From the IMG/VR virus record IMGVR_UViG_3300031957_002643, positions 186,001-250,000 of that record: a DNA stretch of 64,000 bases; one strand, given 5' to 3'. A program made the translations under genes and the position numbers. Positions 6,501 to 57,444 of this stretch are shown here, piece by piece. Under the pieces are notes generated by a model that did not search any database, was not told where the DNA came from, and saw only the letters and a program-made list of their open reading frames with translations. The stretch's first letter is position 1. The number at the start of each line of letters is the position of its first letter.

Positions 6501-9500
6501 ATGCTCCTGTTCCGGTGGATGCATCGGGGAATTTGGTTGATCCAATCACATCAGGATTAGTTTCACTTGACCAAGTATTAAACCCAGAACGGGATTGGAA
6601 CTATGGTGATTATAGTCCAATCGAACAACAGTTTAATAATTCATATCTGGGACCATATGCATATGCTCTGGCGGGTTATTTGATGAAGCCTGCCCGGTTT
6701 GTTGAATTCCTATGGTCAGATTATTCATTCACTATCGGTATGGACCAAAGTCTATTTGGTGGCCCTATCACAGTTGACGATGAAACACTAAAAAGACCGA
6801 AACTATCTGATCTAAAAATTCATTCTGAGGAAGAGAACCTTTCTAATCCCGGCATTAATGCATGGATTGCAGAGACATTGAACCTTTCACGCATTTCTCC
6901 CGTTGCATTTGGGGATATGTTGAGAAATACAAATGTTTCTCTTGGGTGGAAGACGAATGGGTTTATTGATAAGAAGTCAACAATAATCAAGACACCTTCT
7001 GGTGTCGAAATTCCATTCGAAGATGTACAATTGGCAGTCCATAAGGGTCTACCGGTTGAAAGTAAATTCCATTCTGGTGTCCAAATCCTAAAGCGCGGGT
7101 CAAAGTACCAAGTGTATGGCTATGATTACACCAATCCATTCTTCAAAATCAATTATTCAGCGAGACCATCTATAGGCGGCAGAACGACTATTGAAGAAAC
7201 CTATACGTCACAAGATGGTATTACATCATTTACCCTGACCAAGTTCAAAGTCGGAAGTGAAAATGATATCGCTAAGTTCACAGTTTTGATTGATGGTTTC
7301 AAGGTAGATTCTAAGTACATCAACATCACGAGCGCGACAACGTTTGAAATCTTTGATCCAAAATTATCATCAGGCCAACAAGTTTCTGCACAGTTAACAA
7401 CGACTTATACCAATCCAAGTACGAGAAGTCGCAAATTTAGTATAGGTGATACTGATTACTTCTATTACACATATAGAACCAACACTATCATTGAATACCC
7501 ATATGGTCATCAGTTCAACAGTCCACAGGAAGTAGTTGAGTTTTTAGCTGATCACGGAAACTATATGGAAGATCAAGGCTGGGAGTATGTTGCCGGTGAT
7601 GATTGGGTTGATGTGGCTAAGCGCTTTGCTTCATGGTCACAAACTGCAACCAATAATCAGATTTTCGTAGATGTACCCTCTGGTTTGGAATTAACACTGA
7701 AATCAAGCTTTGGTCATTTGGCCAATATTGAAAAACTGGTATATGGCGGATATAGCTTATTAGATATTGCTGCTCTTCCGATCAAAGAATTTGATACGTA
7801 CAGATTCGATGACAAGGTTACGGTCAAAACATCTGAATTGATTTTTGGACTACGTGCCAACATTGTTGATTACCAGCATGCAGTGTTTATTTCGAACAAA
7901 ACTCGCTTCAATGATTTGGTTTATGATCCATTCACGGGACTTAGACAGAAGAGATTAGAGATCAAATCATTACGAACCAAAGAATGGGCAGGCCGTATTG
8001 AGACGCCCGGATATGTCATTCTGGACGATGCACTAATTCCGAATTTTGAGAAATATACCAAAGACTTCATTCGTTATTATGACATGCATAACCCTGTATC
8101 TGATCCAAAATTCAGAGATCAGGCGTTCAATCTTTATGGATGGTACTATAAAGACTATATGCGTGAGATGAATATTAATGACATTCAAGCGTTGAAGTTT
8201 CACAAGAGTGCTATCCGTGAAAAGGGGACCAGACGTGCGGTTTCCGGTTTCTCTGTGGCCAAAGATAATGAAGCACCATTAGAAATTTATGAATGCTGGG
8301 CATGGAAAGAGGGCGAATTTGGCAAGACTCCTTATGATAATCCGATCCGGTTCAGCTTATTCGAAAGTGATTTCAGAAATAGAATTCAAGGCGTCAAGTT
8401 TGGAACAACTGACGAAAGCAATGTCATTGAGGTGACTAATTATGACCGCAGTGCATCTCATGACCGCTGGGTGGTAGCTCCACGTGGAACCAATTTCGAA
8501 TTCCCAATGACCGGAGATATCCCAAGCTCAGACTATGATATTAGACTGGTTGTATTGGAAGACGAAACAGTCAGCAAGAAAATGTTCCATTTTGATCCAT
8601 CTAACGGATTACACGAGCCGAATGCATATTCTCAGATTGATATTGAAACAGCATTTGATCCTGCATACTACAACAAGGGTACTGCTCGTACAGGAGAAGG
8701 GTTCGAATGGGCTGAAACTCGTGTTGGAACCATTTGGTGGGATACGACATACCGAGAATACGCGGACTATCACAACACCTCTCTCACGATTAAAGAAGCA
8801 GCAGAGCTATGGGGATCGTTGAAGAAGTTTTCTATCTCTAATACAACATTTGCTAATAGTTCTACCAAGCTTACATCTACGGTAGAGGCCGGACACAATT
8901 TTGTTGTTGATCAGGCAATTATTGTTGAAAACAAAGAGGGAAGAAGACTTAATGGTGTTATTGATGGTGTCAGTGGTAACTCAATAACTTACACCCTGTT
9001 TGATGGTCCAGAAACGATTGCTATTCTAAACAATCCTATTCTATTGTCGAACCTAGTCTCGATGACGAACCGTAGTATTGATGTTTATGAGTGGATAGAA
9101 TCCAAAGTTCCACCATCACAATTCACGTCAGAAGATGGTGACGTGAGTGTTTACAATCCATTGGACCCTTCATACACCGAAGTCACAAGATCGGATAATT
9201 CAAAGAGGTACTATTTTTGGGTCACGAACAGAAAAACAGTAGCTAATGGGAAATTCTTATCGATTTACCAGATTTCTAATCAGTTGAGAGACCCAACATC
9301 AAATCTTCTTCCATGGTTTGGTGTATTGAATAAGAATTCTATGATTTTCAATGCTTCATCGCTTGAGACTAGAAATGATCTATCCATTCAGGTGTTCACT
9401 TATCCAAAACAACACGAAGAACACGATCAGTGGGCCATTTTGGTCGAAGACGACAACCGTTCATACGTCAATGAATCGACCGTCGAAAAGATCATCGATA

Positions 9501-39708: not shown

Positions 39709-40279
39709 TATTGGATTTAATACAAATTATTCCCTCATAAAGCAAAAATTTGAAAGCAGATACTTCCTGTCACAACACGGGATGATAGATGATTGTGAAA
39801 TTTTAGATCGGCGTGTCGAGTTCAAAGATATAGAAAAAGCAAAATTCTTTGATGATTGGTTTTCTAAACTTGAGCAGACTGAAACTATTCTTCCGTCTGC
39901 AATAGAATTAAATAAAATCAACTCATTCTCTATCAAAGCGTCTGTTGCCGTTCCAAAAGACAAACACATTAATGTGTATTGCTCGTCCGATGGAGGAGAC
40001 GCAGCATATGAAATTTGGAAGCTGTTCAAATTACTGAATGGCCGATTTTGGCTCGTCGAAACTACGGACACTCGATTTGGAAGTATTGCTTTTCAAACTG
40101 TCTTATTAGAAGATGAATCTGATACCTGTACTGTCATGTGTATCTTTGATGGTTTAAAGTCTGATCATGAATTGAGTGGACGTTTTTCAATCGCTGTTAA
40201 TTCCGCATCACTTCGCGCCAATACAATTAGTTCAGGTTCGTTAACGGTTGCAAATAATGGGAATCTGTGTTTTTCATAA
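39698..40279 (+). CDS. Hypothetical protein
   Basis: SD GGAG before ATG 39698. Confidence 0.6.
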   Translation: MRYSIGFNTNYSLIKQKFESRYFLSQHGMIDDCEILDRRVEFKDIEKAKFFDDWFSKLEQTETILPSAIELNKINSFSIKASVAVPKDKHINVYCSSDGGDAAYEIWKLFKLLNGRFWLVETTDTRFGSIAFQTVLLEDESDTCTVMCIFDGLKSDHELSGRFSIAVNSASLRANTISSGSLTVANNGNLCFS

Positions 40280-40320
40280 TTTCTCTTTACAAATGATTTC
40301 GATCCGTATATAAAAACATT

Positions 40321-40836
40321 ATGACCCGTCGTCCTCACTTCATTATGCTTGGTGGTGTCCCCGCTACTGGCAAATCAACCCATCGCGCAACGTTGATGGA
40401 GAAGTATCCTGATGCCTTCGTGTATTCCACGGATGATCGTCTGAAGGAAATTGCTGCAAGCCGTGGCGTTTCTTATGGCGATCTCCCGATGAAGGAACAC
40501 AAGCAGGCAAAGGCCCATATGAACGCCAAATTGAAAGAGGCGATCAATAAGGGTATGGATATTATTTGGGATCAGACTAACTTTTTGGCTCATGTTCGCC
40601 GCAATCGACATGATATGATTCCGAATACCTATACGAAGGAATTGTTTTTCTTCCATTGTCGTGACGATGAAGAAATTAAGCGTCGTATTTCCGAACGCAC
40701 GGAACAGCAGGTGCCATGGCATGTCGTTGCAAACATGATCGAACGTCTGGAACTTCCGGGCGGCGATGATGAGGTGTTCGAAAAATTCGAACTTATCGAT
40801 ACTACGCCTTCATCGACGGATGGTAATAGCGAATAA
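40321..40836 (+). CDS. P-loop kinase (AAA_33 / polynucleotide kinase-like)
   Basis: GVPATGKST, STDD and WDQTN...R.R; preceded by TTTACA-17-TATAAA and 6 nt (leaderless). Confidence 0.85.
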   Translation: MTRRPHFIMLGGVPATGKSTHRATLMEKYPDAFVYSTDDRLKEIAASRGVSYGDLPMKEHKQAKAHMNAKLKEAINKGMDIIWDQTNFLAHVRRNRHDMIPNTYTKELFFFHCRDDEEIKRRISERTEQQVPWHVVANMIERLELPGGDDEVFEKFELIDTTPSSTDGNSE

Positions 40837-41389
40837 CTGGATCGGTGGCATCATGTCGCCAGTGAAACCATGCATAATTGTGGCGTGGCGAACTGTCACC
40901 ATCTCGTTTTTCGAACCACCTTGGTCGTTTGGTTAGAACGATTTTCCCGGCATAAAAATCACAATCCCCAAACAGGGCACGCCTAGTGTGTGCGCAGTCC
41001 CATTCGTTTCGCATGAGAACAGATACGGATTTAATATCGCCTGTAGCCACCATGTCAACAGCACGTCTAACGAATGGTTCTGAAATTTCTCGCTCATAGG
41101 GCGGATTAGTTACGATGTGATCCCCGCGTGGTTCAGCATCCATGAAATCTTCTACCGAACCGTATCCCCAATCATAAATGTCTGAACTGGTGACATTTGG
41201 ATTGTATTGTTTGATCCCTTCAGCCATCAAACCGGAACCACAAGCCGGTTCCCAAATTTGACCGCTGAAATGATCAGGAGTATCCTTGAAGGTTTCAAAC
41301 AAGGCTTCAGTGCACCACTCTTCAATTGTGAAGTATGCATCGTTTGCGATCCGGTCATAACCAGATGTTGACATGGCTTTATCTTTCAT
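40802..41389 (-). CDS. Amino-DNA methyltransferase (N6-A/N4-C)
   Basis: D.YFT, WEPACGSG (motif I) and TNPPY (motif IV); start uncertain (41374/41389/41416). Confidence 0.85.
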   Translation of the reverse strand: MKDKAMSTSGYDRIANDAYFTIEEWCTEALFETFKDTPDHFSGQIWEPACGSGLMAEGIKQYNPNVTSSDIYDWGYGSVEDFMDAEPRGDHIVTNPPYEREISEPFVRRAVDMVATGDIKSVSVLMRNEWDCAHTRRALFGDCDFYAGKIVLTKRPRWFEKRDGDSSPRHNYAWFHWRHDATDPVIRYYHPSMKA

Positions 41390-41422
41390 GTTAATAGTTA
41401 TTGGCCGGATCGGCATTTACCA

Positions 41423-41653
41423 ATGGGATGGACTATGGATATTTTTTCTTTCATTGCTGCATTGATCATCACGATCCTTGCTTTTGTGGGACGTTTTGTC
41501 TTTTATAAAAAAGGCGAGTATCATCATATTTCAATTGCTTGTGCTGTAGTTGGTTCCATTTCTATTATGGTATTTGGAATTTCGACAATTGTACTGATGG
41601 TTAACTTTCTGTTGACCCATGACTTTATTACTGTGACTGAAATTAACAGTTGA
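41423..41653 (+). CDS. Small membrane protein (2 TM)
   Basis: Two hydrophobic segments. Confidence 0.55.
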   Translation: MGWTMDIFSFIAALIITILAFVGRFVFYKKGEYHHISIACAVVGSISIMVFGISTIVLMVNFLLTHDFITVTEINS

Positions 41654-41696
41654 CAAATGCTTCTCTCCCGTGTATAAAGGACATAACACGGGAGAG
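41650..41696 (+). promoter_or_regulatory. Sigma70-like promoter with embedded RBS-occluding inverted repeat
   Basis: TTGACA-17-TATAAA; CTCTCCCGTGT (41663-41673) pairs with ACACGGGAGAG (41686-41696). Confidence 0.65.
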
Positions 41697-41702
41697 GACA
41701 TT

Positions 41703-42287
41703 ATGGTGCCGCATATTTCTACGCTGCAAAATCGTGATACTGCTCAACTCGCAGCAGAAGAACTTGCCCGTCAGGAAGTTACGGTCGATTGGCTCTATGA
41801 CTCCAAGGATGCATGGAGCGCTATCCAACGGGTTTTCTGCTGGACGAGCGATGATGCAGAATCCATGGGTTTAGACCCGTGGCGTTTCAATCCTGATCTG
41901 GACGCGGCTCAAGAGCGTGGTTGGCGATTCTTCGTACAAGTTTCCGATCTGCCCGAACGCGATCAGATTATTTTCCGCATCTGTAAAATGATTCGTCCTT
42001 ACATGTGGCGTTCTGGTTACGTTGAATCTGGTCTCGATTCCAAGGATCATATTTCGATTTGGGTTCCGAAACGCTTTATGGAGCACGCTCCCGACGATGA
42101 GGGCAGCAGCGATGAACTTGATGGGTTCGTTATCAAAATGATAGAAGGCATTACGTTCAATGGTCCAATCGTGGAAACGTGGGTGGGCATGTCAACACTC
42201 GGTTGGGGCGATCTTCCTCTGGAAGACCTGAAGCTGGTCGAACAATGGGTCACCGAAGAAATCGACAAACTCAAGAAGGGAAATTGA
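41703..42287 (+). CDS. Hypothetical protein
   Basis: SD GGAGAGGA before ATG 41703. Confidence 0.7.
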   Translation: MVPHISTLQNRDTAQLAAEELARQEVTVDWLYDSKDAWSAIQRVFCWTSDDAESMGLDPWRFNPDLDAAQERGWRFFVQVSDLPERDQIIFRICKMIRPYMWRSGYVESGLDSKDHISIWVPKRFMEHAPDDEGSSDELDGFVIKMIEGITFNGPIVETWVGMSTLGWGDLPLEDLKLVEQWVTEEIDKLKKGN

Positions 42288-42288
42288 A

Positions 42289-42615
42289 ATGACCAAGAAA
42301 GAAGCAATGGAACGTTGGGCGGGCCTCAAACCCAATCAAAAGGTTTTGCCGCATATGACGCCGCTGCCTGCGGCTTCTGAAGGCTCGACGTATGGCGCCT
42401 GTGGTATCCGCATCACCGGTAACCCGGAATTCGTGGACGCGGTTCTGTCCCGACTGAAGGACCTTCTGGAAGCCGAAGGCGAAACCACTCGTCTGCATCT
42501 GGCTCGTGCTCCGATCAAGGACACCAGTGAGAAGCAATTCCACAATCGGGATGGTGGTGCGGAAAGCTGCTACATTCAGGTCCGCGAACGAGCACGACCG
42601 AAACCGCCCCGTTAA
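42289..42615 (+). CDS. Hypothetical protein
   Basis: 108-aa ORF directly after the previous stop. Confidence 0.7.
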   Translation: MTKKEAMERWAGLKPNQKVLPHMTPLPAASEGSTYGACGIRITGNPEFVDAVLSRLKDLLEAEGETTRLHLARAPIKDTSEKQFHNRDGGAESCYIQVRERARPKPPR

Positions 42616-43082
42616 CGATTAGAGTTTATATTCACTAGAATTTCACGGGGTCGAGGTAGATGGTCTACCTCGATTTCCGTTTCTGAAGATGCCGAAGACG
42701 AAACTTCGATCTTACCGACATTCAGAATTCTTTGCCAAAATGTTTGCTGACACCGAAACTTGGTAATGTCCTGCAAAAAGATTTGAGTGACTTCCTTATC
42801 AAAGATACCGTTCGTCACTCGGATATATGTATTAGTTATCAGAACATCAGTACTTTTGATGTTGTATAACCATCCGGCAAAGCTTAACAGAACCATCACA
42901 AACACACCAATTGCAATAGCTAGACTTTGGATGACAAACCAAGGTAGTATCAGCGCTGCAACCAAAAGCGCGACGAGCAATGCGAAATGGAACGGCTTTG
43001 ATCTGATCATAGCCGGATTCGCGTGATACAGAATCTTTTTGTCTGCCCGCTTCTCTATATTTTCGTTTCCATTTTCGAACAT
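42612..43082 (-). CDS. Membrane protein with bacterial PH (bPH_2) domain
   Basis: 2 TM, then ITN..I....GIF....I.L.DI.....QTFWQRILNVG.I. Confidence 0.8.
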   Translation of the reverse strand: MFENGNENIEKRADKKILYHANPAMIRSKPFHFALLVALLVAALILPWFVIQSLAIAIGVFVMVLLSFAGWLYNIKSTDVLITNTYIRVTNGIFDKEVTQIFLQDITKFRCQQTFWQRILNVGKIEVSSSASSETEIEVDHLPRPREILVNINSNR

Positions 43083-43142
43083 GAAATTGCTCCTTATGAT
43101 AAGTATATTATGTATTAACCTACATTACAAGAGAAAATTGTC

Positions 43143-43376
43143 ATGGACGCTACCAAGCAGAAAATCGAAAACATCCTTTTAGAAGCAGAAGAATTGACGG
43201 AATACAATAAATCCGACAAAGTTGCAAACTGGAAGGCGAAATTCATGCGTGATAACAAACACATCGGCAGTAAGACATATCACATGACCAAACGAAGTGT
43301 AGCCGTATCCAAAGCAGAGAAACTTGCGAACCGTGTCGGTGCCACTGTTTATGATTTTGCTCAAACGTTTATCTGA
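43143..43376 (+). CDS. Hypothetical protein
   Basis: 77-aa ORF, divergent from the PH-domain gene. Confidence 0.6.
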   Translation: MDATKQKIENILLEAEELTEYNKSDKVANWKAKFMRDNKHIGSKTYHMTKRSVAVSKAEKLANRVGATVYDFAQTFI

Positions 43377-43431
43377 CTTGACATAAGCTCACATATCTGT
43401 TTATGTGTGGTCTCGTATAATAGAGAGCCGC

Positions 43432-43770
43432 ATGTCAGATGATCCCCAGACATATGATTTCGTCCAACCACCACGTACTGGTGGTGAGGCTAGAGCACGA
43501 TTATGTCCCTTTAAGGTTTCAACCTATTGTATGGTGAATGGCTGTATGGCGTGGATGACTCTTTCTGATACTGAAGAAATTGCAGACAAACCAATATCCC
43601 ATATCGAGGTTACGGACAATGATGGAAACGGTCAGCAAATTCAAAAGAAAATGAATATTACTAACACTTGGAAAGAAATCGAAATTGACGGTACGATCAA
43701 ATACGAAAGAAGATTGAGATGGCAAGAGCTTGTTGGTATTTGTATGCGTTTGGAGAAAAATAATGGATAG
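43432..43770 (+). CDS. 4-Cys protein, paralogue 1
   Basis: EARARLCPF..C....CMAW...G.C. Confidence 0.7.
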   Translation: MSDDPQTYDFVQPPRTGGEARARLCPFKVSTYCMVNGCMAWMTLSDTEEIADKPISHIEVTDNDGNGQQIQKKMNITNTWKEIEIDGTIKYERRLRWQELVGICMRLEKNNG

Positions 43771-44053
43771 TGATTCTGTTATCGGTTCCCCGTTACGCTC
43801 CAGAAAGGAAATGGCCAATAAGTTATGTCCATTCAAGCTTGCGTCGGGTACGGGGTTCACTGCTTGCGAAACCCTACAATGTGCTGCATGGCAAACGGTG
43901 GTGAGCGAATTAGAAGTCAAAGCTGAAGACCTCCCATTATATCAAGATAGTGCAGCACAGGTGAAGCCACTGTCAGGTGGAATGTTTCATGTTACGTTGA
44001 AGCGTAATGAGTGTTTGGGTGTTTGTCATATGCTTCATGGGGTCAAGGTATGA
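43763..44053 (+). CDS. 4-Cys protein, paralogue 2
   Basis: EMANKLCPF...C....CAAW...GVC; SD GGAG. Confidence 0.7.
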   Translation: MDSDSVIGSPLRSRKEMANKLCPFKLASGTGFTACETLQCAAWQTVVSELEVKAEDLPLYQDSAAQVKPLSGGMFHVTLKRNECLGVCHMLHGVKV

Positions 44054-44463
44054 AGCTTACACCAGACAATATAAAGCAACCGATCCTTAACGAAAACGAA
44101 GCCAAGAAGAAAAATTGTTTTAAAGCAAACGGACACAATTGTTGTGCTAACAATTGTATGGCTTGGATTCGTTTGAATGATAAAATCATTATTGATGAAA
44201 TGCCCGAAGAGCCAACTGAAGGCATAACACATCGAACCATTCGGCAACGGCGTTATAACGGGTATTATGGCGATAATAGTATCATAGACACCTATCGTCA
44301 AAATATTGAATGGGAAGAACACGTTGATGGTGATGGGAACACTTATTTCTCTCGCCCACCATCAGCCGACATTAAGGATTTCAATAAAATATATGGTTTT
44401 TGTCTTGCATTAGAAGAAATAATGTGTAATATCCAAGCTTCCATGTCAGAACCCAAGGAGTAA
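44050..44463 (+). CDS. 4-Cys protein, paralogue 3
   Basis: EAKKKNCF...C....CMAW...GFC; ATGA overlap. Confidence 0.7.
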   Translation: MKLTPDNIKQPILNENEAKKKNCFKANGHNCCANNCMAWIRLNDKIIIDEMPEEPTEGITHRTIRQRRYNGYYGDNSIIDTYRQNIEWEEHVDGDGNTYFSRPPSADIKDFNKIYGFCLALEEIMCNIQASMSEPKE

Positions 44464-44466
44464 TTC

Positions 44467-45102
44467 ATGAAACTCTGGCAAGTCAAAAGAGGCACCGCCC
44501 TTCATGGGTTACTACAAGGTGCTGTCAATCTGAATGCAACCGCATTCGAACCAACATACTTCGATGATGGGAAATACAGCCCCCTTCTTCGTCGTTTCCG
44601 TGGCAATATGATGAACTTCTGCGAGGTATCACGACATGTGATCCTCTGGACGCCTCTGTATCTTCTGGTACATGTGCTTATGATTGCCATGCCGCTGACC
44701 GCAATCTTCGTTTATCCGGTCATGCGTTTCGGTGTAACACCCATCATGTGGTATTTCATTGTTGCTGCTGGTGTTGCTGCTGTCATTATTGCGTTGATGT
44801 TCTTAGTCAGAACAACTGAGAAAATCACGGATGCACGGCGAGCAGCAAAAGAAGAAAAACGAGCAGCGGAGCAACATGCTGAGCCGGTCGTCAAGAAAGA
44901 GAACAAGTTCTTCAAATGGCTTGTCAATTTCATGGTCAACGGTGTCTTTAAGTTCATCGGCAGAACCCTTCTGTTGTTCGGACTGATCCCCGCGATCTTC
45001 AAATTCATCGCCATGCTCTATACCATGTTCAAGGACAATTTCTGTCCGATGGTTGAGATCGTTGACGATGAAACCGAAACCACAGAAGAAGGAGCAGAGT
45101 AA
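44467..45102 (+). CDS. Membrane protein
   Basis: Several hydrophobic segments, N-terminal NFC and C-terminal FCP; SD AAGGAG. Confidence 0.7.
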   Translation: MKLWQVKRGTALHGLLQGAVNLNATAFEPTYFDDGKYSPLLRRFRGNMMNFCEVSRHVILWTPLYLLVHVLMIAMPLTAIFVYPVMRFGVTPIMWYFIVAAGVAAVIIALMFLVRTTEKITDARRAAKEEKRAAEQHAEPVVKKENKFFKWLVNFMVNGVFKFIGRTLLLFGLIPAIFKFIAMLYTMFKDNFCPMVEIVDDETETTEEGAE

Positions 45103-45443
45103 TGAAGCTTTCTGATTTTCTCCTCAAGCGCAAGAACATCATTCCTGCCCTTGGCGTGTCCCTTCTCTTTAGCCTTGTATGGGTTTGGGTTGTTGTTTTC
45201 TTGATCCCGAATCTGTCTGGCGAATGGGAAACCGTTTCGACCGAAGAATGTCCAGTGACGGTTCAGGTTCGAGATAATGGCTCTCCGTATCTAACTGCGA
45301 CATGTGATGATGAGACGATCAATATCATTAGCTCTTCGCAAGTAGCGAGAGCGCTATATGACAATACTGATACTGCGCAATGCACGATCAGTCGTCATTC
45401 TCACAGTGGTGATACAAATTACTCTTGCAGAATTTCTTCTTGA
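45102..45443 (+). CDS. Membrane-anchored protein with 4 Cys in a probable periplasmic domain
   Basis: One TM followed by a Cys-containing domain. Confidence 0.65.
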   Translation: MKLSDFLLKRKNIIPALGVSLLFSLVWVWVVVFLIPNLSGEWETVSTEECPVTVQVRDNGSPYLTATCDDETINIISSSQVARALYDNTDTAQCTISRHSHSGDTNYSCRISS

Positions 45444-45475
45444 CAACTCAATAAAAACCGTATAACTATACGGTT
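45440..45475 (+). promoter_or_regulatory. Sigma70-like promoter with perfect palindrome over -10 region
   Basis: TTGACA at 45440; AACCGTATA-AC-TATACGGTT (45456-45475) abuts ATG 45476. Confidence 0.55.
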
Positions 45476-46267
45476 ATGAAAAGAGAACTGTCAAAAGAAC
45501 TTCCGCTCCGAGTGATCGGTGACGTGCACGGTGGCTTCGAGGAATTCGAAGCCATCGTTCGTCATGGTCTGGAACAAGGCCGCTTCATTGTGTGCCTTGG
45601 CGATCCTGAAGACCGTGGCCCGAACCCGGCCAAAGTGATCGAACTCATCATGGACCTTTATGATGAGGGCAAGGCCGACGAAGTTATGTCCAATCACAAA
45701 TGGAAGCACTATCGGTATTACGATGGTCGTCCGGTGATGCTCAATGACGAGCACAAGAAGACTCGTCGTGATATCAACTCCATGGGCCGTGAATTCGTTG
45801 AACGTTATCTTGAGTTCTGTAAACGAGTTCCGTGGTTTATCCGTCATGGTGATAACTTCTTCGCCCATGCATCATATCATCCGATTGCCTGTGAAGAAGC
45901 ACCGAGCCGGAAGTATCGCAAGATTCTTCAGGAACGCCTGATCTATGGCCAAACGAGTGGACGTATGGAAGGTGGATTACCAGTGCGACTGTTGGATTGG
46001 ATTGACCGTGTTCCTGAAAGCATGAATGTGTTTGTCGGTCACCACATCCTGTCAACCGAAGAAATCCTTCAGTTCCAAACGACTGGTGGGAAGGTCCACT
46101 TTGTTGACCTTGGTTGTCAGTCGCGTGAAGGTGGTCAACTGGCCTATGTTGACATCGATGAAGGAAAGATCACAGGTTCGTCCCATGATATCTCCTTCAA
46201 AGATGATCCTTCGGAATTTGGCGATTATCGTTTGAACGTTTCTGAGAGCAATGCGAATGGCGAGTAA
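45476..46267 (+). CDS. Metallophosphoesterase (PrpE / bacterial Pnkp phosphatase-domain-like)
   Basis: GDVHG, GD..DRGP, SNH..K..RY..GR.V, HA, IYGQT.G....G.PVR..W, VGH and DLGC...GG.L. Confidence 0.85.
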   Translation: MKRELSKELPLRVIGDVHGGFEEFEAIVRHGLEQGRFIVCLGDPEDRGPNPAKVIELIMDLYDEGKADEVMSNHKWKHYRYYDGRPVMLNDEHKKTRRDINSMGREFVERYLEFCKRVPWFIRHGDNFFAHASYHPIACEEAPSRKYRKILQERLIYGQTSGRMEGGLPVRLLDWIDRVPESMNVFVGHHILSTEEILQFQTTGGKVHFVDLGCQSREGGQLAYVDIDEGKITGSSHDISFKDDPSEFGDYRLNVSESNANGE

Positions 46268-46605
46268 AGACGGAACATCATCCGTTCTCTGAATTCGCTT
46301 GCTCCAAAAATTTCAATCATTAATCCCAACCGCGATCCTTCTGGACGCCCGGTTAGTACCAAATACACATCTCGAAAGAACGAACGGAGCCGTTCCTTTC
46401 CGTAGTGTTCCTTGCCAACCGCATAACAGATGGTCATATATTCTTCGGAAGTGTGACCATCTTCTAATTGCGGAAGAAGATCGTTCATTGCACCAATAAA
46501 AATGCGAGCACGCTCATGCAACTCGGCCACTGGTGCGTCGAGTTCAAAGGTATCGTCACTATAGTCAATTAGTGCGAAATAAGCTGCAAGTTCTCTGTAA
46601 TCCAT
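46225..46605 (-). CDS. Stand-alone class I lysyl-tRNA synthetase anticodon-binding-domain-like protein
   Basis: EEYMTICYAVGKEH....LRSFFRDVYLVLTG...GSRLG..I..FG matches the LysRS-I C-terminal pattern; no HIGH/KMSK catalytic domain. Confidence 0.75.
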   Translation of the reverse strand: MDYRELAAYFALIDYSDDTFELDAPVAELHERARIFIGAMNDLLPQLEDGHTSEEYMTICYAVGKEHYGKERLRSFFRDVYLVLTGRPEGSRLGLMIEIFGASEFRERMMFRLYSPFALLSETFKR

Positions 46606-46612
46606 AAATCGG

Positions 46613-46640
46613 ATTATACGTCATTTAGTGGGAAAGTCAA
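46613..46640 (-). promoter_or_regulatory. Sigma70-like promoter, leaderless
   Basis: TTGACT-16-TATAAT, 7 nt before ATG 46605. Confidence 0.7.
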
Positions 46641-46759
46641 CTGATCCGGTAACCAATTAACCAGCAATCGATTCTAAAGAACCATTTGCCATCTTTCTTA
46701 CCGGCCCCAATACGGATCATTCGATTATTTTGATCCAATTCGATCACATCAATTTTCAT
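46637..46759 (-). CDS. 40-aa hypothetical protein (below ORF-track cutoff)
   Basis: MKIDVIELDQNNRMIRIGAGKKDGKWFFRIDCWLIGYRIS fills the gap downstream of the tRNA. Confidence 0.55.
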   Translation of the reverse strand: MKIDVIELDQNNRMIRIGAGKKDGKWFFRIDCWLIGYRIS

Positions 46760-46777
46760 TTTAATATCTCAGGAAAA

Positions 46778-46854
<77 letters not shown>

Positions 46855-46883
46855 ATGACTATATTTATAGTATAAACGTATAC

Positions 46884-47288
46884 TTAAGTCAAATGGTTTT
46901 TCTGTAAAATCTCATCAACCATGTGATCTCTGACGTTTTGATACATCATGAAACCTGCTGCCCCTTTGAAATTCAAAGGGGCAGCAGTACAATCCAGACC
47001 AATGGTATAAAGACTAGTCCCTTCCATGGCGTGCGAGAAACCAGACCAACTTTGGATACCAGATGATTCTGCATCAACAACGATGTGCTTTTCGCCAGCT
47101 AATGCTAATTTGAAGTTTTTCTTCAAGGTGGCATATTCGGCTTTCGTATCTCTCAGATATTCATAATCTGAGAAGTGCAAGAAGTGTGCAGTTATGTGAT
47201 TGGAATCAACATTAAGCAATTCCTTCAGTCGTGCAATAACAGGAAGACGAACCTCGTTGGGTCCGCGTGTCAAAATTACAGTTCGCAT
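46884..47288 (-). CDS. Hypothetical protein, degenerate P-loop-kinase-like
   Basis: VILTRGP and HIVVD follow AAA_33 topology but GKS/T is missing. Confidence 0.5.
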   Translation of the reverse strand: MRTVILTRGPNEVRLPVIARLKELLNVDSNHITAHFLHFSDYEYLRDTKAEYATLKKNFKLALAGEKHIVVDAESSGIQSWSGFSHAMEGTSLYTIGLDCTAAPLNFKGAAGFMMYQNVRDHMVDEILQKNHLT

Positions 47289-47289
47289 A

Positions 47290-47592
47290 TCATATGTCCT
47301 CGTAAGTCAATGATAGGTTAATTTTGTCCCCTGTTACAATAATATCCATAATAATTTCATCGGTTGCTAATGATGTGACATGTACATCGTGACCGGGGAA
47401 CAGTTTCATGACTTGTGTTTCTACGTCTTCATCAAACATGTTCCATAAATCTAGAGAGATTAGCAAACTCATCAAATCCCTAATTGGATTTTGGTTTGAA
47501 TATTGATCTTCTGTGAGCCGGATCATGTACCTATTGTCTGGAAACAATTCGTACATGGGGATCATGGTTACTTCTTCTTCACGGTATTCCAT
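47290..47592 (-). CDS. Hypothetical protein
   Basis: 100-aa ORF with SD GAGGA. Confidence 0.6.
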   Translation of the reverse strand: MEYREEEVTMIPMYELFPDNRYMIRLTEDQYSNQNPIRDLMSLLISLDLWNMFDEDVETQVMKLFPGHDVHVTSLATDEIIMDIIVTGDKINLSLTYEDI

Positions 47593-48269
47593 TTCAATAT
47601 GTCCTCGTATAAGATATCATCATTTGTGTTGCTTTTGAATGCTTCTAGTGTCTTCTGGGAGTTTTTATCGTCTACTGCATCCTTTCCTTTTTTCACGTTA
47701 TGATTTTGTCGAATATGTCTTGCAAAATCTGACGTAAAGAATGGGAATGATCTCAATGCTCTGTTGAGATGTTTACAAACAATGCCTCGCTGTTTCGGGT
47801 TTCTGACATTTGGCGGTCTATCTTCTGGAACGATTGCAGCATCAATCTGTGTCAAAAGATACTGGTACCCCCAAAATAAAAACGAAGGACATGTACAATG
47901 AAGCATCAAGTCTCCTTGAAGCATCATTAATCTGGCTCTGTCGATTGGACTGAACTCGGTTTCATCAATGAAGGCATCCCAATCATTGATCTTGAATTGG
48001 TTCAAATATGTAATGTTGTTATCTTTGTGTTGGGAGGATTTGATGTTAAAAATCAATGAGTTCTCGTCAAATCCCTTCAACCGGACACCCTCAAGCGCAT
48101 TAGCACGAACACGCTGTTTAAGAAAATCATTGTCGATAAACATTTGAATTTCTTTGTATGTCGCTTCCTTGATGATCTCATTATCTGGTTTATCCAAATG
48201 ATGATGTTCACAAAGGGAGTGATAGTTCGTGACTAAAAAGGGTTTTCCGTCTACTAGTTTAACGTTCAT
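47568..48269 (-). CDS. SWIM-like Zn-finger protein
   Basis: HCTCPSF....Y and P..RNP...G.VCKHL. Confidence 0.7.
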   Translation of the reverse strand: MNVKLVDGKPFLVTNYHSLCEHHHLDKPDNEIIKEATYKEIQMFIDNDFLKQRVRANALEGVRLKGFDENSLIFNIKSSQHKDNNITYLNQFKINDWDAFIDETEFSPIDRARLMMLQGDLMLHCTCPSFLFWGYQYLLTQIDAAIVPEDRPPNVRNPKQRGIVCKHLNRALRSFPFFTSDFARHIRQNHNVKKGKDAVDDKNSQKTLEAFKSNTNDDILYEDILKWNTVKKK

Positions 48270-54167: not shown

Positions 54168-54635
54168 ATGCGTAATATGAATGAAACTGCACAAGATATG
54201 GTGCGTATCAGCGCGGAAGAACACAAGATATTATTTGGATATCTTGATGGTCTTCCGAAAACTATTATGAATCAATTGTGTAGGAACAAACCACTCGAAC
54301 ATTCATCGACTGGTATCACTATTGTGAAAAATTTTTCTGTTTTGAATGTTCGACCTCCACTATTAGAACGCGAAATGACACGCTCTGATTTCTTTGAAAC
54401 AGGCGCAGTTGATTACGGTTTTCACTATAAAGCAGAGGCGATTTATATGTTTGTTCGTGACAACGAATATGGTGGGGTGGTACAAACGCCAAAGCAATCG
54501 ATCCCGCTGTATGACGTGCTGGAATCGATTGCTTTGATGACCAATGGGCGCTGGTCGGTATTTGATGATCGGATTTGGTTTGAAGATAACGAAGACGCTG
54601 ACCGTCTAAGTATCTATCTCACTTATTCATATTGA
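54168..54635 (+). CDS. Hypothetical protein
   Basis: 155-aa ORF divergent from nrdA. Confidence 0.6.
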   Translation: MRNMNETAQDMVRISAEEHKILFGYLDGLPKTIMNQLCRNKPLEHSSTGITIVKNFSVLNVRPPLLEREMTRSDFFETGAVDYGFHYKAEAIYMFVRDNEYGGVVQTPKQSIPLYDVLESIALMTNGRWSVFDDRIWFEDNEDADRLSIYLTYSY

Positions 54636-56068
54636 TCGTAGAAGATAGGTGTACCCCATGATGGCGTTGGAGGTGTACCCCAATTCTCAACGATAACCCA
54701 AATCATTTTCTTGATCCACGATTGGTGATCTTCACACCAACCTTCTCCGTAACCATCAGTGAAGAAAATGATCGCATCGTATGGATCACCATTTTCTTCT
54801 TGTTGTGCCTTCATCCATTCGAATGCAGGATGGAACAAAGTACCGCCACCACCTTGGAACGGATACTGAGTAATTTCATCTCCGTTTTCAATGTCATAAT
54901 GCTCATGGCCATATACCCGAGTATCACATGAGATGACATCGATTTCGTAGCTATCGAACTGGTTGACGATACCATAGAGTTCACCAAGAACTTTTTTGAG
55001 ATCATCAGGTCCAATAGAACCAGAGGTATCTGCAATAACTCCAATTTTACATGTTGTCTCGTGTTCAACTCCTTCGAGGGTTACACCTTGGCTGAACATC
55101 CGAGAGTCAACGCGAATGGGCGAGTAGTCACTGATACGAAGAGAGTCGAGTTCTGAAACGATCAAATCGGACCATGGTACTTTGGGCTTACGCCACTCCC
55201 CGATCAAACGCTGAACACCAGCAGGAATAGTTCCACGTGCGTTTGTAGGATCAGACTGTCTAGCCTGATTAGCCGCTTGAAGTGTTGAGTTACGGGCCGA
55301 ACGAGCAACTTCCTTTTGTTCATCTTCATCGAGTTCATCAATGATATGAACATCAAGGGTTTTGGCATCCTTGTGAAGATTACCGCCCGCGCCCTCACCA
55401 CTATTACCTTGTCCGCCACCACCCATTTGCTGGCACTCTTTTTGTTTTTTGTCGTCCTCTTCTTTGAGGATTTCATAAACCTGCTCAGCAGTCATGTTTG
55501 CGAAGCGCTCATCGTACAGGCCAACATAAGGAGCTTTTGAAACACCAAAGGCCGCTTCAAGCATTTCAATATCATCCTTGTATTCGGATGATATTTGCTT
55601 CTTCACTTGTGCGATAGCTTCATTGACTTTGGAAGTTTCCGGCATCTTGAGACCAGCATCCATCAATGTTTGATTGATGATGTAGTCAGTGGCAACATTC
55701 CACAATTGTGGATCACGCGAACCTCGACGCCCCAATGAGTCGAACACAACGTGCATGATTTCGTGACAATACACGAATACTTGTGCATCATTGTCCTTTG
55801 CCAAACCAGTTGGATTCAGCAGATGCATAAACAATGCATTGAAGAAGAAGTGTTTGCCATCAGCAGCAGCGGTATCAATCAGCGGATGGTCCGGTGCCAT
55901 AACAATTGACGGATAGGAAACCACGAAGTGACCAAAGAACGGCATCTTCGTTGAAATGGCAATCTTAACTCTCGTCAATTCGGCATAGGGATCAAACCCA
56001 AGCTTTTTGGGATCAAGCTTGGGTTGGTCCGGCGAAAGAAAGTGACGAATGATAAGTTTCGGGTCCAT
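54623..56068 (-). CDS. Metallopeptidase-like plus VWA domain protein (DUF2201-like)
   Basis: TAAADG, HEIMH (HExxH), WNVATDY.IN, MIDAS DTSGS, GGGGT.F and FTDG. Confidence 0.85.
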   Translation of the reverse strand: MDPKLIIRHFLSPDQPKLDPKKLGFDPYAELTRVKIAISTKMPFFGHFVVSYPSIVMAPDHPLIDTAAADGKHFFFNALFMHLLNPTGLAKDNDAQVFVYCHEIMHVVFDSLGRRGSRDPQLWNVATDYIINQTLMDAGLKMPETSKVNEAIAQVKKQISSEYKDDIEMLEAAFGVSKAPYVGLYDERFANMTAEQVYEILKEEDDKKQKECQQMGGGGQGNSGEGAGGNLHKDAKTLDVHIIDELDEDEQKEVARSARNSTLQAANQARQSDPTNARGTIPAGVQRLIGEWRKPKVPWSDLIVSELDSLRISDYSPIRVDSRMFSQGVTLEGVEHETTCKIGVIADTSGSIGPDDLKKVLGELYGIVNQFDSYEIDVISCDTRVYGHEHYDIENGDEITQYPFQGGGGTLFHPAFEWMKAQQEENGDPYDAIIFFTDGYGEGWCEDHQSWIKKMIWVIVENWGTPPTPSWGTPIFYDQYE

Positions 56069-57444
56069 TATCCTGCCTTCGTGACTGCAAGGTCTTGGCT
56101 GTTCACAATAGCACTCAATTTCTTGTTCATCAAGAACCATTGGCTGGTGTTATCTTTGATGAGGCGGCTAAGTGCCGCCGCCGCTTCATCGCCAGCCTTC
56201 TTGTGAACAATTACGTGCATCGTAACTTTGTTCAGCAACATCATTGCCCATTCAGCATCATCAATACGATCCGTGAGCATGAAGGTTGCTGCATATTCAC
56301 CACGTTCTTCGGTGAAATTGTTTTGAAGTTTGCTGATCAGCGACATCAAGAATGCAAACTTCAGAGAAAGAGCACGAGACTTCATCGAACGGTCTTCACC
56401 ATCCGCAGACACGTCTCGGACTACTTTTTCATAATCGATGCTCTTGATCTTGCCGTTCAATACATCTTCCGGGTCAGGAAGATGTACATAGATATCAACC
56501 CAAGCCATGAAATCAGCAGCAGTTGCTTCACCGATAGTGCCAGCAAGCAGAGCATCCATGACCAAGCGACTGGAAGCATCAGATTTATCGAACGTTGCAA
56601 TCGCGTCCGTGTAGATTTGTGATGCGAAGGCCCAAGTACGAGGTGTCGGGAAACTGGATGAACCAGTGCGGGCCGAAATGGACTTGGCATCAAAATCGAA
56701 CAAAGCTTCGGATTTGAAGTTCAGGAAACCAAGAACTTCGCTGCACACACCATTATTCATGGCCCAATCACGCCAACGATTATAAGTCGGCTCATCGATG
56801 TGAACGTGTGTCATTCGGGAAACCAGTGCTGGTGACATAGAAGTTGCACCAACCTTGTCTTCAACACGGTTGCCCGCCGCAACGATATCAACTGCATCGG
56901 GAAGAACATATTCACCCAACGAGCGGTCCAGCACAAGCTGAAGTGCTGCGCCCTGAACCAGCTTCGGTGCAAGCGACAACTCATCCATGAAGATCACAGA
57001 GAATTGGTCATGAAGACCGGTAACAATTCGAGGAAGAAGGCGATCAGTATGTTCGTCGCCATCCAATACACGCTTGATGAGTTCATCAAGTTTGGACTTG
57101 GACATAGGGAGATTGTTGGTGACCAACCATTCGGCTTCTTCCTTGTCACGATTGTATACAGGAAGACCCTTGAGATCGGTCGGGTTCATAAGAAGAAGTC
57201 GGTTGTCGTAAACCCGGCGACCGACAAATGTATTACCGCAGATGTCTTTGAATTCATTGGGGAATTTAGAAACTAGCTCCGGGTGATCGGGAATTGTGTA
57301 TTCCTGTTCGTCTGCCAGTCCCTTGATGACCTCGGATTTACCGACGCCCGGTGGACCCCAGATCATCGCAACTTTCTTTGATTTCCAGAGAACTTGGAGA
57401 ACGGCGGGAACCATGTCGATTGAAATGTGGGATAGCGATGACAT
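56068..57444 (-). CDS. MoxR-like AAA+ ATPase
   Basis: GPPGVGKS, DL.GLP, FMDEL, AAGNR, L.SR and TPRTW; TAATG-coupled to the VWA gene. Confidence 0.88.
   Translation of the reverse strand: MSSLSHISIDMVPAVLQVLWKSKKVAMIWGPPGVGKSEVIKGLADEQEYTIPDHPELVSKFPNEFKDICGNTFVGRRVYDNRLLLMNPTDLKGLPVYNRDKEEAEWLVTNNLPMSKSKLDELIKRVLDGDEHTDRLLPRIVTGLHDQFSVIFMDELSLAPKLVQGAALQLVLDRSLGEYVLPDAVDIVAAGNRVEDKVGATSMSPALVSRMTHVHIDEPTYNRWRDWAMNNGVCSEVLGFLNFKSEALFDFDAKSISARTGSSSFPTPRTWAFASQIYTDAIATFDKSDASSRLVMDALLAGTIGEATAADFMAWVDIYVHLPDPEDVLNGKIKSIDYEKVVRDVSADGEDRSMKSRALSLKFAFLMSLISKLQNNFTEERGEYAATFMLTDRIDDAEWAMMLLNKVTMHVIVHKKAGDEAAAALSRLIKDNTSQWFLMNKKLSAIVNSQDLAVTKAG

What the first reader, a model, noticed from the sequence alone, without database searches (positions are those of the whole stretch)
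43432..44463. Tandem trio of 4-Cys proteins with a conserved clasp and hypervariable insert
Seen: three overlapping genes share P-x5-E-[AM]-x4-C-[P]F-x(n)-C-x4-C-[MA]AW near the N-terminus and G-x-C-x2-L near the C-terminus. The roughly 40-75 aa between these motifs are unrelated in length and sequence. Inference: a Zn-binding scaffold presenting exchangeable target-binding inserts, as expected for a diversifying family of host-takeover or anti-defence adaptors.
Basis: partly seen in the sequence, partly recalled or inferred. Interest (0 to 1): 0.6.

Follow-up and report, generated by a model that had tools for sequence, protein, structure and literature searches.

The report
Tandem four-cysteine mini-proteins in jumbo phage
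Three back-to-back small genes of a 335-kb marine phage are diverged copies of a very large, uncatalogued family of four-cysteine (probably metal-binding) mini-proteins, here enlarged by an acidic beta-sheet insert; their function is unknown.

Summary
Genes g1 (43432-43770, 112 aa), g2 (43763-44053, 96 aa) and g3 (44050-44463, 137 aa) overlap by 8 and 4 nt and are paralogues. They share four invariant Cys (C1, C2-x4-C3-x-A-W, G-x-C4).

They are not orphans. They form a long-insert branch of a family with at least 2,156 protein clusters. These are 57-115 aa phage, prophage and some chromosomal proteins with the pattern LTE-EA-x2-KWCP...C-x4-CMAWRW...GYCGLAGKP. No Pfam, PHROG, NCBIfam or PDB match was found.

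Across 128 members the four Cys and one Gly are invariant and C2-C3 is always 4. The C1-C2 loop (6-45 aa) and C3-C4 loop (12-108 aa) vary freely. This fits "conserved clasp, variable insert" at family level.

Within the jumbo-phage clade, however, the inserts are homologous. They share a W-E-E-I-x-I-D-G-x3-Y hairpin that AlphaFold2 predicts with confidence.

The syntenic locus holds 1, 2 or 3 copies in related phages. The single-copy orthologue varies between samples only by an in-frame 27-nt repeat (1-4 copies).

Metal binding, Cys convergence and any anti-defence role remain untested: the clasp was modelled at low confidence and no coordinates were available.

The parts
43432..43770 (+). g1, 112 aa; family member with C25, C33, C38, C104
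   Evidence: ORF list and JGI gene call; BLASTP to g2 and g3; profile searches
43763..44053 (+). g2, 96 aa; shortest and most diverged copy (C22, C35, C40, C88); start overlaps the g1 stop by 8 nt
   Evidence: BLASTP to g1 E 4e-6, to P0004 1e-7 and P0006 4e-7
44050..44463 (+). g3, 137 aa; longest copy (C23, C31, C36, C118, plus two extra Cys); ATGA overlap with g2
   Evidence: BLASTP to g1 2e-7, to P0007 4e-14; best window hit of the outside-only HMM
43468..43557 (+). g1 N-terminal half of the clasp: P13...E19-A20...C25-P-F...C33-x4-C38-M-A-W41
   Evidence: invariant columns; codons TGT 43504-43506, 43528-43530, 43543-43545 read
43663..43716 (+). g1 residues 78-95: beta-hairpin W-K-E-I-E-I-D-G-T-I-K-Y-E-R inside the insert; the only confidently modelled part
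   Evidence: AlphaFold2 block pLDDT 92-93, strands 78/81-85 and 88-94/95 in both runs; motif shared with g3, P0004, P0007, P0012/13
43735..43752 (+). g1 C-terminal half of the clasp: G102-I-C104-M-R-L107
   Evidence: G and C invariant in 128 sequences
43826..43891 (+). g2 clasp: C22-P-F...C35-x4-C40-A-A-W43
44018..44035 (+). g2 C-terminal G86-V-C88-H-M-L
44116..44166 (+). g3 clasp: C23-F...C31-x4-C36-M-A-W39
44395..44412 (+). g3 C-terminal G116-F-C118-L-A-L
   Evidence: TGT 44401-44403 read

Best explanation
g1, g2 and g3 are old tandem duplicates of one gene, co-transcribed and translationally coupled. They belong to a very large, uncurated family of cytoplasmic mini-proteins. The family core is four invariant cysteines: C1 after an N-terminal E-A helix, a C2-x4-C3-x-A-W knuckle, and G-x-C4 in the last strand. 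The most likely reading (inferred) is that the four Cys bind one metal ion, probably Zn(II), and pin the N-terminal helix and knuckle to the C-terminal strand. The two segments between the ligands are then free to change length and sequence. In the jumbo-phage branch the C3-C4 segment has grown into a 47-108 aa acidic beta-meander with a conserved W-E-E-I-x-I-D-G-x3-Y hairpin. I take this to be the surface that binds a partner (inferred). The locus evolves fast by gene duplication or loss and by in-frame repeat slippage. That pattern, together with its place among accessory early or middle genes, fits a dispensable binder of a host or phage macromolecule. Shown: paralogy, family membership, invariance of the Cys, loop variability, copy-number and repeat-number variation, beta-hairpin prediction. 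Inferred: metal binding, clasp geometry, binding function, accessory or counter-host role.
For: Paralogy and motifs. Family: a trio-only profile finds outside members. A short-form profile finds at least 2,156 clusters, none with a Pfam domain or a name other than 'hypothetical'. An outside-only HMM finds g3 and g1. Invariance: four Cys and one Gly in 128 sequences; C2-C3 is always 4, C1-C2 6-45, C3-C4 12-108. No signal peptide or hydrophobic N-terminus is seen in the sequences. Insert structure: strands through residues 40-105 and a hairpin at pLDDT about 92. Inserts are acidic, pI 4.3-5.0. Locus dynamics: one copy in L006/L010/L027/L028, two in L023, three here. Flanking genes are 42-72% identical between relatives, against 25-37% for array members. 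Alleles with 2, 3 and 4 copies of the 27-nt repeat lie in otherwise 100% identical DNA, and a 1-copy protein variant (P0012) is also on record. Accessory character: absent from the five nearest cultured jumbo phages, with the profile that does find the trio. Short forms sit in clusters of small genes beside Tad2-like, Lar and HNH genes. A weak resemblance of C-x4-C-x2-W-R to the Zn knuckle of zf-CW was seen (E 0.5, a lead only).
Against: No direct evidence of metal binding. AlphaFold2 gives the Cys region pLDDT below 50 even with 128 sequences. No structural neighbour was found. Conserved aromatic residues around the Cys (KWCP, CMAWRW, GYCG) and C-P would also suit an Fe or Fe-S centre. Several members lie near RNR, ThyX, glutaredoxin or DNA polymerase genes. 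Chromosomal, syntenic copies in Desulfovibrionaceae argue that the family is not purely a phage weapon. There is no conserved neighbour and no known partner. Fast divergence could reflect relaxed constraint rather than an arms race. Repeat-number alleles come from short-read assemblies and could in part be assembly collapse.
Confidence: 0.5

Rival explanations
1. The four Cys hold an iron centre (rubredoxin-like Fe(Cys)4 or a small Fe-S cluster), and the proteins are electron carriers or redox or oxygen sensors serving phage nucleotide metabolism (RNR, ThyX) or another redox enzyme.
For: Four invariant Cys with adjacent conserved aromatics and C-P / G-x-C-G, as in many Fe-S and rubredoxin sites (motif comparison from general knowledge). 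The trio lies in a replication and nucleotide-metabolism region with PolB, RNR and topoisomerase II. P0009 is 0.85 kb from ThyX and RNR. The L010 orthologue is 5 kb from glutaredoxin and the RNR small subunit. There is a conserved chromosomal version in anaerobic Desulfovibrionaceae.
Against: No similarity to any rubredoxin, ferredoxin or HiPIP model. No conserved redox partner next to the gene in 74 bacterial loci. Highly variable loops and three paralogues are unusual for an electron carrier. Many members sit in phages without RNR or ThyX nearby.
Confidence: 0.2
2. They are nucleic-acid-binding zinc fingers that regulate phage transcription or translation. The three copies would have different DNA or RNA specificities.
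For: They are small Cys4 proteins. Short forms occur in the early regions of Mu-like prophages beside Mor and GemA. P0010 is placed directly before a DNA polymerase gene.
Against: The trio and their jumbo-phage relatives are acidic overall (pI 4.7-5.5; inserts pI 4.3-5.0), which is poor for nucleic-acid binding. No HTH or known DNA-binding finger was detected. Short forms have median pI 6.1.
Confidence: 0.1
3. The three proteins are subunits of one hetero-oligomer, co-translated from overlapping genes, rather than alternative binders.
For: Overlapping start and stop codons suggest translational coupling. The beta-rich inserts could pair edge to edge.
Against: Related phages manage with one or two copies. 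Overlaps are common in phage genomes regardless of complex formation. The single g1+g3 co-fold gave no verdict either way (listed only under Tried and rejected).
Confidence: 0.1
4. The copies are decaying duplicates under relaxed constraint with no distinct functions, and the variability is neutral.
For: g2 has the shortest insert, has lost the W-E-E-I hairpin motif and scores weakest against the family. The tree is saturated.
Against: All three keep intact frames, all four Cys, the A-W and the G-x-C. There are no frameshifts or stops. The same three proteins are found letter for letter on several contigs.
Confidence: 0.1

Closest known systems
Uncurated 'KWCP...CMAWRW...GYCGLAG' mini-protein family (57-115 aa; phages, prophages, some bacterial chromosomes)
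   Same: Four invariant Cys with C2-x4-C3, A-W after C3, G-x-C4, and an N-terminal E-A-x4-C-P. Detected in both directions by profile searches.
   Different: The trio has a short C1-C2 loop (7-12 aa against a median of 24) and a long structured C3-C4 insert (47-81 aa against a median of 25). It has lost KW before C1 and RW after C3, and it replaces C-G-L-A-G-K-P by C-x2-L-E. It is in tandem copies, whereas 74 bacterial loci have one copy.
zf-CW zinc finger (Pfam PF07496; e.g. ZCWPW2, PDB 4z0o)
   Same: A C-x4-C-x2-W-R knuckle followed about 20 residues later by an aromatic-Cys. Both are small Cys4 domains with conserved Trp.
   Different: HMMER E is 0.5, not significant. There is no Pfam hit. 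zf-CW has its third and fourth Cys downstream, whereas here one ligand lies upstream of the knuckle. zf-CW is a eukaryotic histone-tail reader.
Lar (PF14354) and other small Cys4 zinc-ribbon phage accessory proteins
   Same: Small cytoplasmic Cys4 proteins encoded among early accessory genes. Lar genes lie within 1-3 kb of a family member in L022.
   Different: Zinc ribbons use two C-x2-C knuckles. No sequence or profile similarity was found.
WhiB-like (Wbl) 4Fe-4S proteins of actinophages
   Same: Small phage-borne proteins with four invariant Cys and a conserved Trp-containing motif.
   Different: Wbl spacing is C-x(n)-C-x2-C-x5-C with a G-[VI]-W-G-G turn, which is absent here. No Pfam hit was found.
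In-frame repeat-number (contingency-type) variation in surface or effector genes
   Same: The single-copy orthologue differs between samples only in the number of a 27-nt in-frame unit.
   Different: Seen in the orthologue, not in the trio itself. It duplicates a beta-strand motif of a cytoplasmic mini-protein. No on/off frameshifting is involved.

Membership tests
KWCP/CMAW/GYCG four-Cys mini-protein family (defined here) | Four Cys in the order C1...C2-x4-C3...C4, with the C2-C3 spacing fixed at 4 | tested here: met
   All three genes; invariant in the 128-sequence alignment
KWCP/CMAW/GYCG four-Cys mini-protein family (defined here) | A-W two residues after C3 and Gly two residues before C4 | tested here: met
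   CMAW / CAAW / CMAW and GIC / GVC / GFC
KWCP/CMAW/GYCG four-Cys mini-protein family (defined here) | Significant score against a profile built without the trio | tested here: met
   g3 E 5.6e-5 and g1 1.2e-3. g2 scores only 0.037 but is linked through g1, P0004 and P0006
KWCP/CMAW/GYCG four-Cys mini-protein family (defined here) | C-terminal C-G-L-A-G-[KR]-P tail and K-W before C1 | tested here: not met
   The trio has R-L-C, K-L-C, K-N-C and C-x2-L-[EH], so it is a divergent subgroup
zf-CW (PF07496) | Match to the Pfam model at or above the gathering score | tested here: not met
   No zf-CW hit at E <= 1 or 0.1 for the trio or 16 relatives; PDB profile E 0.5
zf-CW (PF07496) | Both remaining Zn ligands downstream of the C-x4-C knuckle | tested here: not met
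   One invariant Cys lies upstream of the knuckle
Zinc ribbon / Lar-like | Two C-x2-C knuckles | tested here: not met
   No C-x2-C pair in g1, g2 or g3
WhiB-like | C-x2-C-x5-C spacing and a G-[VI]-W-G-G turn | tested here: not met
   Absent from the sequences; no Pfam hit
Metal-binding Cys4 domain (generic) | Four thiolates converge on one metal; metal present in the protein | not testable with these tools
   Clasp pLDDT below 50; no model coordinates returned; no wet assay
DGR variable protein | Template/variable repeat pair near the gene | tested here: not met
   No DNA repeat of 20 nt or more involving the inserts in 40000-48000. A reverse transcriptase was not searched for.
Anti-defence protein (any known family) | Similarity to a described anti-defence family, or a demonstrated effect on a defence system | tested here: inconclusive
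   No PHROG or Pfam hit. Only neighbourhood to Tad2-like and Lar genes in other phages. No functional test was possible.

The most novel reading that the evidence does not exclude
The family is a previously undescribed metal-clasped mini-fold, absent from Pfam, PHROGs, NCBIfam and the PDB. Phages would use it as a general display scaffold whose two inter-ligand loops are free to evolve new binding specificities. The jumbo-phage trio, and the repeat-number alleles of its orthologue, would then be a snapshot of that scaffold diversifying against host targets such as defence proteins.
Probability: 0.2. Interest if true: 0.7.

Novelty: new variant of a known kind. Interest (0 to 1): 0.45.

Why it matters
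A family with thousands of clusters in phages, prophages and some bacterial chromosomes has no entry in Pfam, PHROGs or NCBIfam, no solved relative and no proposed function. Its signature is very sharp: four invariant Cys, W and G. The jumbo-phage trio shows how the family changes. The core is kept while a loop grows into a small beta domain, genes duplicate in tandem, and a strand is multiplied by repeat slippage. If the clasp binds metal and the loops bind targets, this would be a compact natural binder scaffold and a new class of phage accessory protein. If it is an Fe centre, it would be a new small redox protein. Either outcome can be tested with one expression construct and a metal analysis.

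Tried and rejected
- Pfam, PHROGs and NCBIfam scans of the trio and 16-25 relatives gave nothing usable. DUF7448, DUF3195 and WW hits at E about 0.1 were rejected as noise.
- megablast and tblastn against 50,697 phage records found no match for the trio. One weak hit was found for a short form in Pseudomonas phage Dolphis.
- The word-based search with g1 found only itself.
- Scans of IMG/VR and JGI metagenomes with the trio alignment, exonuclease and bPH protein were empty. Two alignments were too variable for pattern scans.
- PDB sequence profiles returned only non-significant rows: FANCI at E 0.07 and zf-CW at E 0.5.
- Foldseek against the PDB had no match at E <= 0.001. VIA-align wide gave a best Z of 2.8. 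ESM Atlas features and structure returned unnamed clusters with TM below 0.4.
- A second AlphaFold2 run with 128 sequences did not improve the Cys region.
- Co-fold of g1 + g3 with two Zn: no verdict (score 0.02). This is neither support nor evidence against binding.
- Maximum-likelihood tree of 21 members: saturated, no supported fork, so the order of duplications cannot be inferred.
- Neighbour clustering around 74 bacterial loci: no gene family shared by more than 6 loci.
- DGR-like or other DNA repeats around the trio: none.
- Literature searches by motif strings and by topic found nothing relevant.
- Sequencing runs: only two seawater-metagenome runs, kept as contigs and possibly the source of the record.
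No alternative genetic code was used. No toxin or animal-virus sequence was involved.

Full report
**Where the window lies.** The window is bases 186001-250000 of a 335,552-bp virus record with direct terminal repeats, judged complete. The contig comes from a JGI metagenome, and the only public runs that hold it are seawater metagenomes. The window carries PolB, class I RNR, topoisomerase II subunits, a helicase and a 5'-3' exonuclease. PolB is 34-37% identical to that of Atu_ph07, Phosso, SCTP-2, a Vibrio jumbo phage and the 121Q group. This is therefore a marine jumbo myovirus only distantly related to cultured ones.

**The observation.**
- Three + strand genes occupy exactly 43432-44463: g1 43432-43770 (112 aa), g2 43763-44053 (96 aa) and g3 44050-44463 (137 aa). 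An independent gene call gives the same products.
- g1 and g2 overlap by ATGGATAG, and g2 and g3 by ATGA. The next gene starts 3 nt after g3.
- Paralogy is statistically supported. BLASTP gives g1-g2 E 4e-6 (N-terminal 43 columns) and g1-g3 E 2e-7 (115 columns, whole length). g2-g3 show no direct match.
- The genome contains only these three copies.

**The trio belongs to a large uncurated family.**
- A profile of the trio alone, run against 1.84 billion representative proteins, found seven outside clusters at E 1.4e-5 to 8.5e-4. Some are long (114-128 aa), and some are short (60-86 aa) with the same Cys pattern.
- IMG/VR gave further short forms.
- A profile of seven short forms then found 2,156 clusters at E <= 1e-3. 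All are 57-115 aa, none has a Pfam domain, and all are either named 'hypothetical protein' or unnamed.
- Their consensus is M-x-LTE-x-EA-x2-KWCP...C-I-A-S-x-CMAWRW...GYCGLAGKP.
- In a 128-sequence alignment the four Cys and the Gly before C4 are invariant, and T, E, A, P, S, M, A, W, R and G are nearly so.
- C2-C3 is 4 in all 128 sequences. C1-C2 ranges 6-45 (median 24) and C3-C4 ranges 12-108 (median 25).
- An HMM built from 117 short forms only, without the trio, ranks g3 first (E 5.6e-5), g1 second (1.2e-3) and g2 fourth (0.037) among 671 frames of the window.
- No Pfam, PHROG, NCBIfam or PDB sequence match exists for the trio or for typical members.

**The inserts are diverged homologues, not unrelated sequences.**
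- g1 and g3 align through the insert.
- g1 and g2 both align through the insert with P0004 from a related phage (E 1e-11 and 1e-7).
- g1, g3, P0004, P0007, P0012/13 and the 98-aa protein of L023 share W-[EK]-E-[IH]-x-[ID]-[DG]-G-x3-[YFW] followed by a basic residue.
- AlphaFold2 of g1, with 15 and with 128 sequences, gives a mean pLDDT of 64. It predicts a run of strands through residues 40-105. The hairpin at 78-95 is the only part at pLDDT about 92. The Cys-bearing residues 26-42 stay below 50.
- The inserts are acidic, pI 4.3-5.0.
- No solved or predicted structure resembles the model.

**The locus in relatives.**
- Synteny with the window is seen in four other sets of contigs: the kinase, a 204-aa protein, a 108-aa protein, a bPH_2 membrane protein, a 77-aa protein and the phosphatase.
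- L006/L010/L027/L028 have one family member directly before the phosphatase.
- L023 has two overlapping members, followed by a tRNA-Cys gene and the homologue of the 211-aa membrane protein.
- L024 has at least one member before the contig ends.
- Flanking proteins are 42-72% identical between these phages. Family members reach only 25-37% over partial lengths.
- The trio shows no DNA-level repeats, so the duplications are old. A tree is saturated and uninformative.
- The single-copy orthologue carries a 27-nt in-frame tandem repeat encoding E-V-E-R-E-W-E-E-I, which is the hairpin strand motif. It occurs with 1, 2, 3 or 4 copies in different samples. Over 600 nt the DNA of the 2-, 3- and 4-copy contigs is otherwise identical except for one G/A inside a repeat.
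- Tandem gene copies were seen only here and in L023. 74 bacterial loci and all other phage loci have one copy.

**Distribution and context of the wider family.**
- The five nearest cultured jumbo phages lack the family when searched with a profile that finds the trio at E 1e-10 to 1e-6. It is therefore accessory.
- Short forms lie in runs of small genes near Tad2-like, Lar-type and HNH genes. Others lie before a DNA polymerase or near ThyX and RNR.
- At least 155 loci in bacterial genomes carry it, mostly Alphaproteobacteria, Desulfovibrionaceae, Nitrospirota and Magnetococcales.
- Some of these are in Mu-like prophages beside GemA and Mor. A 60-aa version in Desulfovibrionaceae is syntenic with MazG and an AI-2E transporter and looks chromosomal.
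- No neighbour is conserved across the family.

**Interpretation.**
- The data show a sharply defined four-Cys core with two length-variable loops. This is best explained by one metal centre that ties the N-terminal helix and knuckle to the last strand.
- Zn is the default for a cytoplasmic Cys4 site of this kind. A C-x4-C-x2-W-R knuckle also occurs in zf-CW fingers, but that similarity is not significant and membership fails.
- An Fe or Fe-S centre is a serious rival, given the aromatic-rich surroundings of the Cys, the frequent nucleotide-metabolism context and the Desulfovibrionaceae copies.
- In the jumbo-phage clade the C3-C4 loop has become a small acidic beta domain. It is the fastest-changing part of a fast-changing locus. 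I read it as a binding surface and the trio as three diverged binders.
- Nothing here identifies a partner, and a role against host defences is only one possibility.
- The co-fold of g1 with g3 gave no verdict and is not used as evidence.

**Limits.**
- Cys convergence could not be tested, because clasp confidence was low and no coordinates were returned.
- Only one round of the exhaustive search was available.
- Repeat-number alleles rest on short-read assemblies.
- Read laying was not used, because only contigs of the probable source samples were on offer.

Noticed in passing
L006:7752-7868 (also L027, L028, L010): A 27-nt in-frame tandem repeat (E-V-E-R-E-W-E-E-I) lies inside the single-copy orthologue. 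It occurs in 1, 2, 3 or 4 copies in different samples, while the surrounding 600 nt of the 2-, 3- and 4-copy contigs are identical.
   Followed up: yes
L023:4741-4817 (minus strand); window 46778-46854 (minus strand): A tRNA-Cys(GCA) gene abuts and overlaps the 3' end of the second family gene in the two-copy relative. The window has a tRNA-Pro(TGG) 2.3 kb downstream of the trio.
   Followed up: partly
window 40321-40836 (+) and 45476-46267 (+): An AAA_33/KTI12-type kinase and a metallophosphatase flank the array. The phosphatase matches PHROG NinI-like phosphatase and, more weakly, the phosphatase part of an 'RNA ligase' PHROG. Together they resemble a split polynucleotide kinase-phosphatase (RNA repair) set.
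   Followed up: no
L006:6261-6959; L010:4740-5438: A 232-aa IS605-type OrfB/TnpB fragment (HTH_OrfB_IS605, Cas12f1-like) is inserted between the 108-aa and 77-aa gene homologues in the single-copy relative. It is absent from the window.
   Followed up: no
window 3569-12442 (+): A 2,957-aa ORF has no Pfam match at E <= 1e-5.
   Followed up: no
window 44467-45102 and 45102-45443 (+): Two predicted membrane proteins (211 and 113 aa) follow the trio without a gap. The first matches PHROG 944 'membrane protein' (E 7e-6) and is present after the array in L023 but absent in the single-copy relative.
   Followed up: partly
window 42612-43082 (minus strand): A bPH_2 (bacterial PH domain) membrane protein is encoded on the opposite strand just upstream. 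It is 56% identical in L023 and 49% in L024.
   Followed up: partly
L061, L069, L072, L074, L091, L097, L100 (about 4001-4183 each): A 59-60-aa version of the family (…CPFLKTSDDKM-x-FC-x4-CMMWR…GYCGLAGKPAGAM) is conserved in Desulfovibrionaceae genomes. In some of these loci MazG lies upstream and an AI-2E transporter downstream, so it looks chromosomal rather than prophage-borne.
   Followed up: partly
window 43378-43421: The 55-nt gap before g1 holds perfect TTGACA and TATAAT hexamers, but they are 32 nt apart, so this is not a canonical sigma-70 promoter. The scan tool did not call it.
   Followed up: no
window 54623-56140 (minus strand): A 504-aa protein carries DUF2201_N (putative metallopeptidase) and a VWA-like DUF2201 domain.
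   Followed up: no
G002:C1:38602-38913 (record of L012): A 43-kb phage with a short-form member may carry a second, weak copy (E 3e-4 and 1.6e-3) elsewhere in the genome.
   Followed up: no
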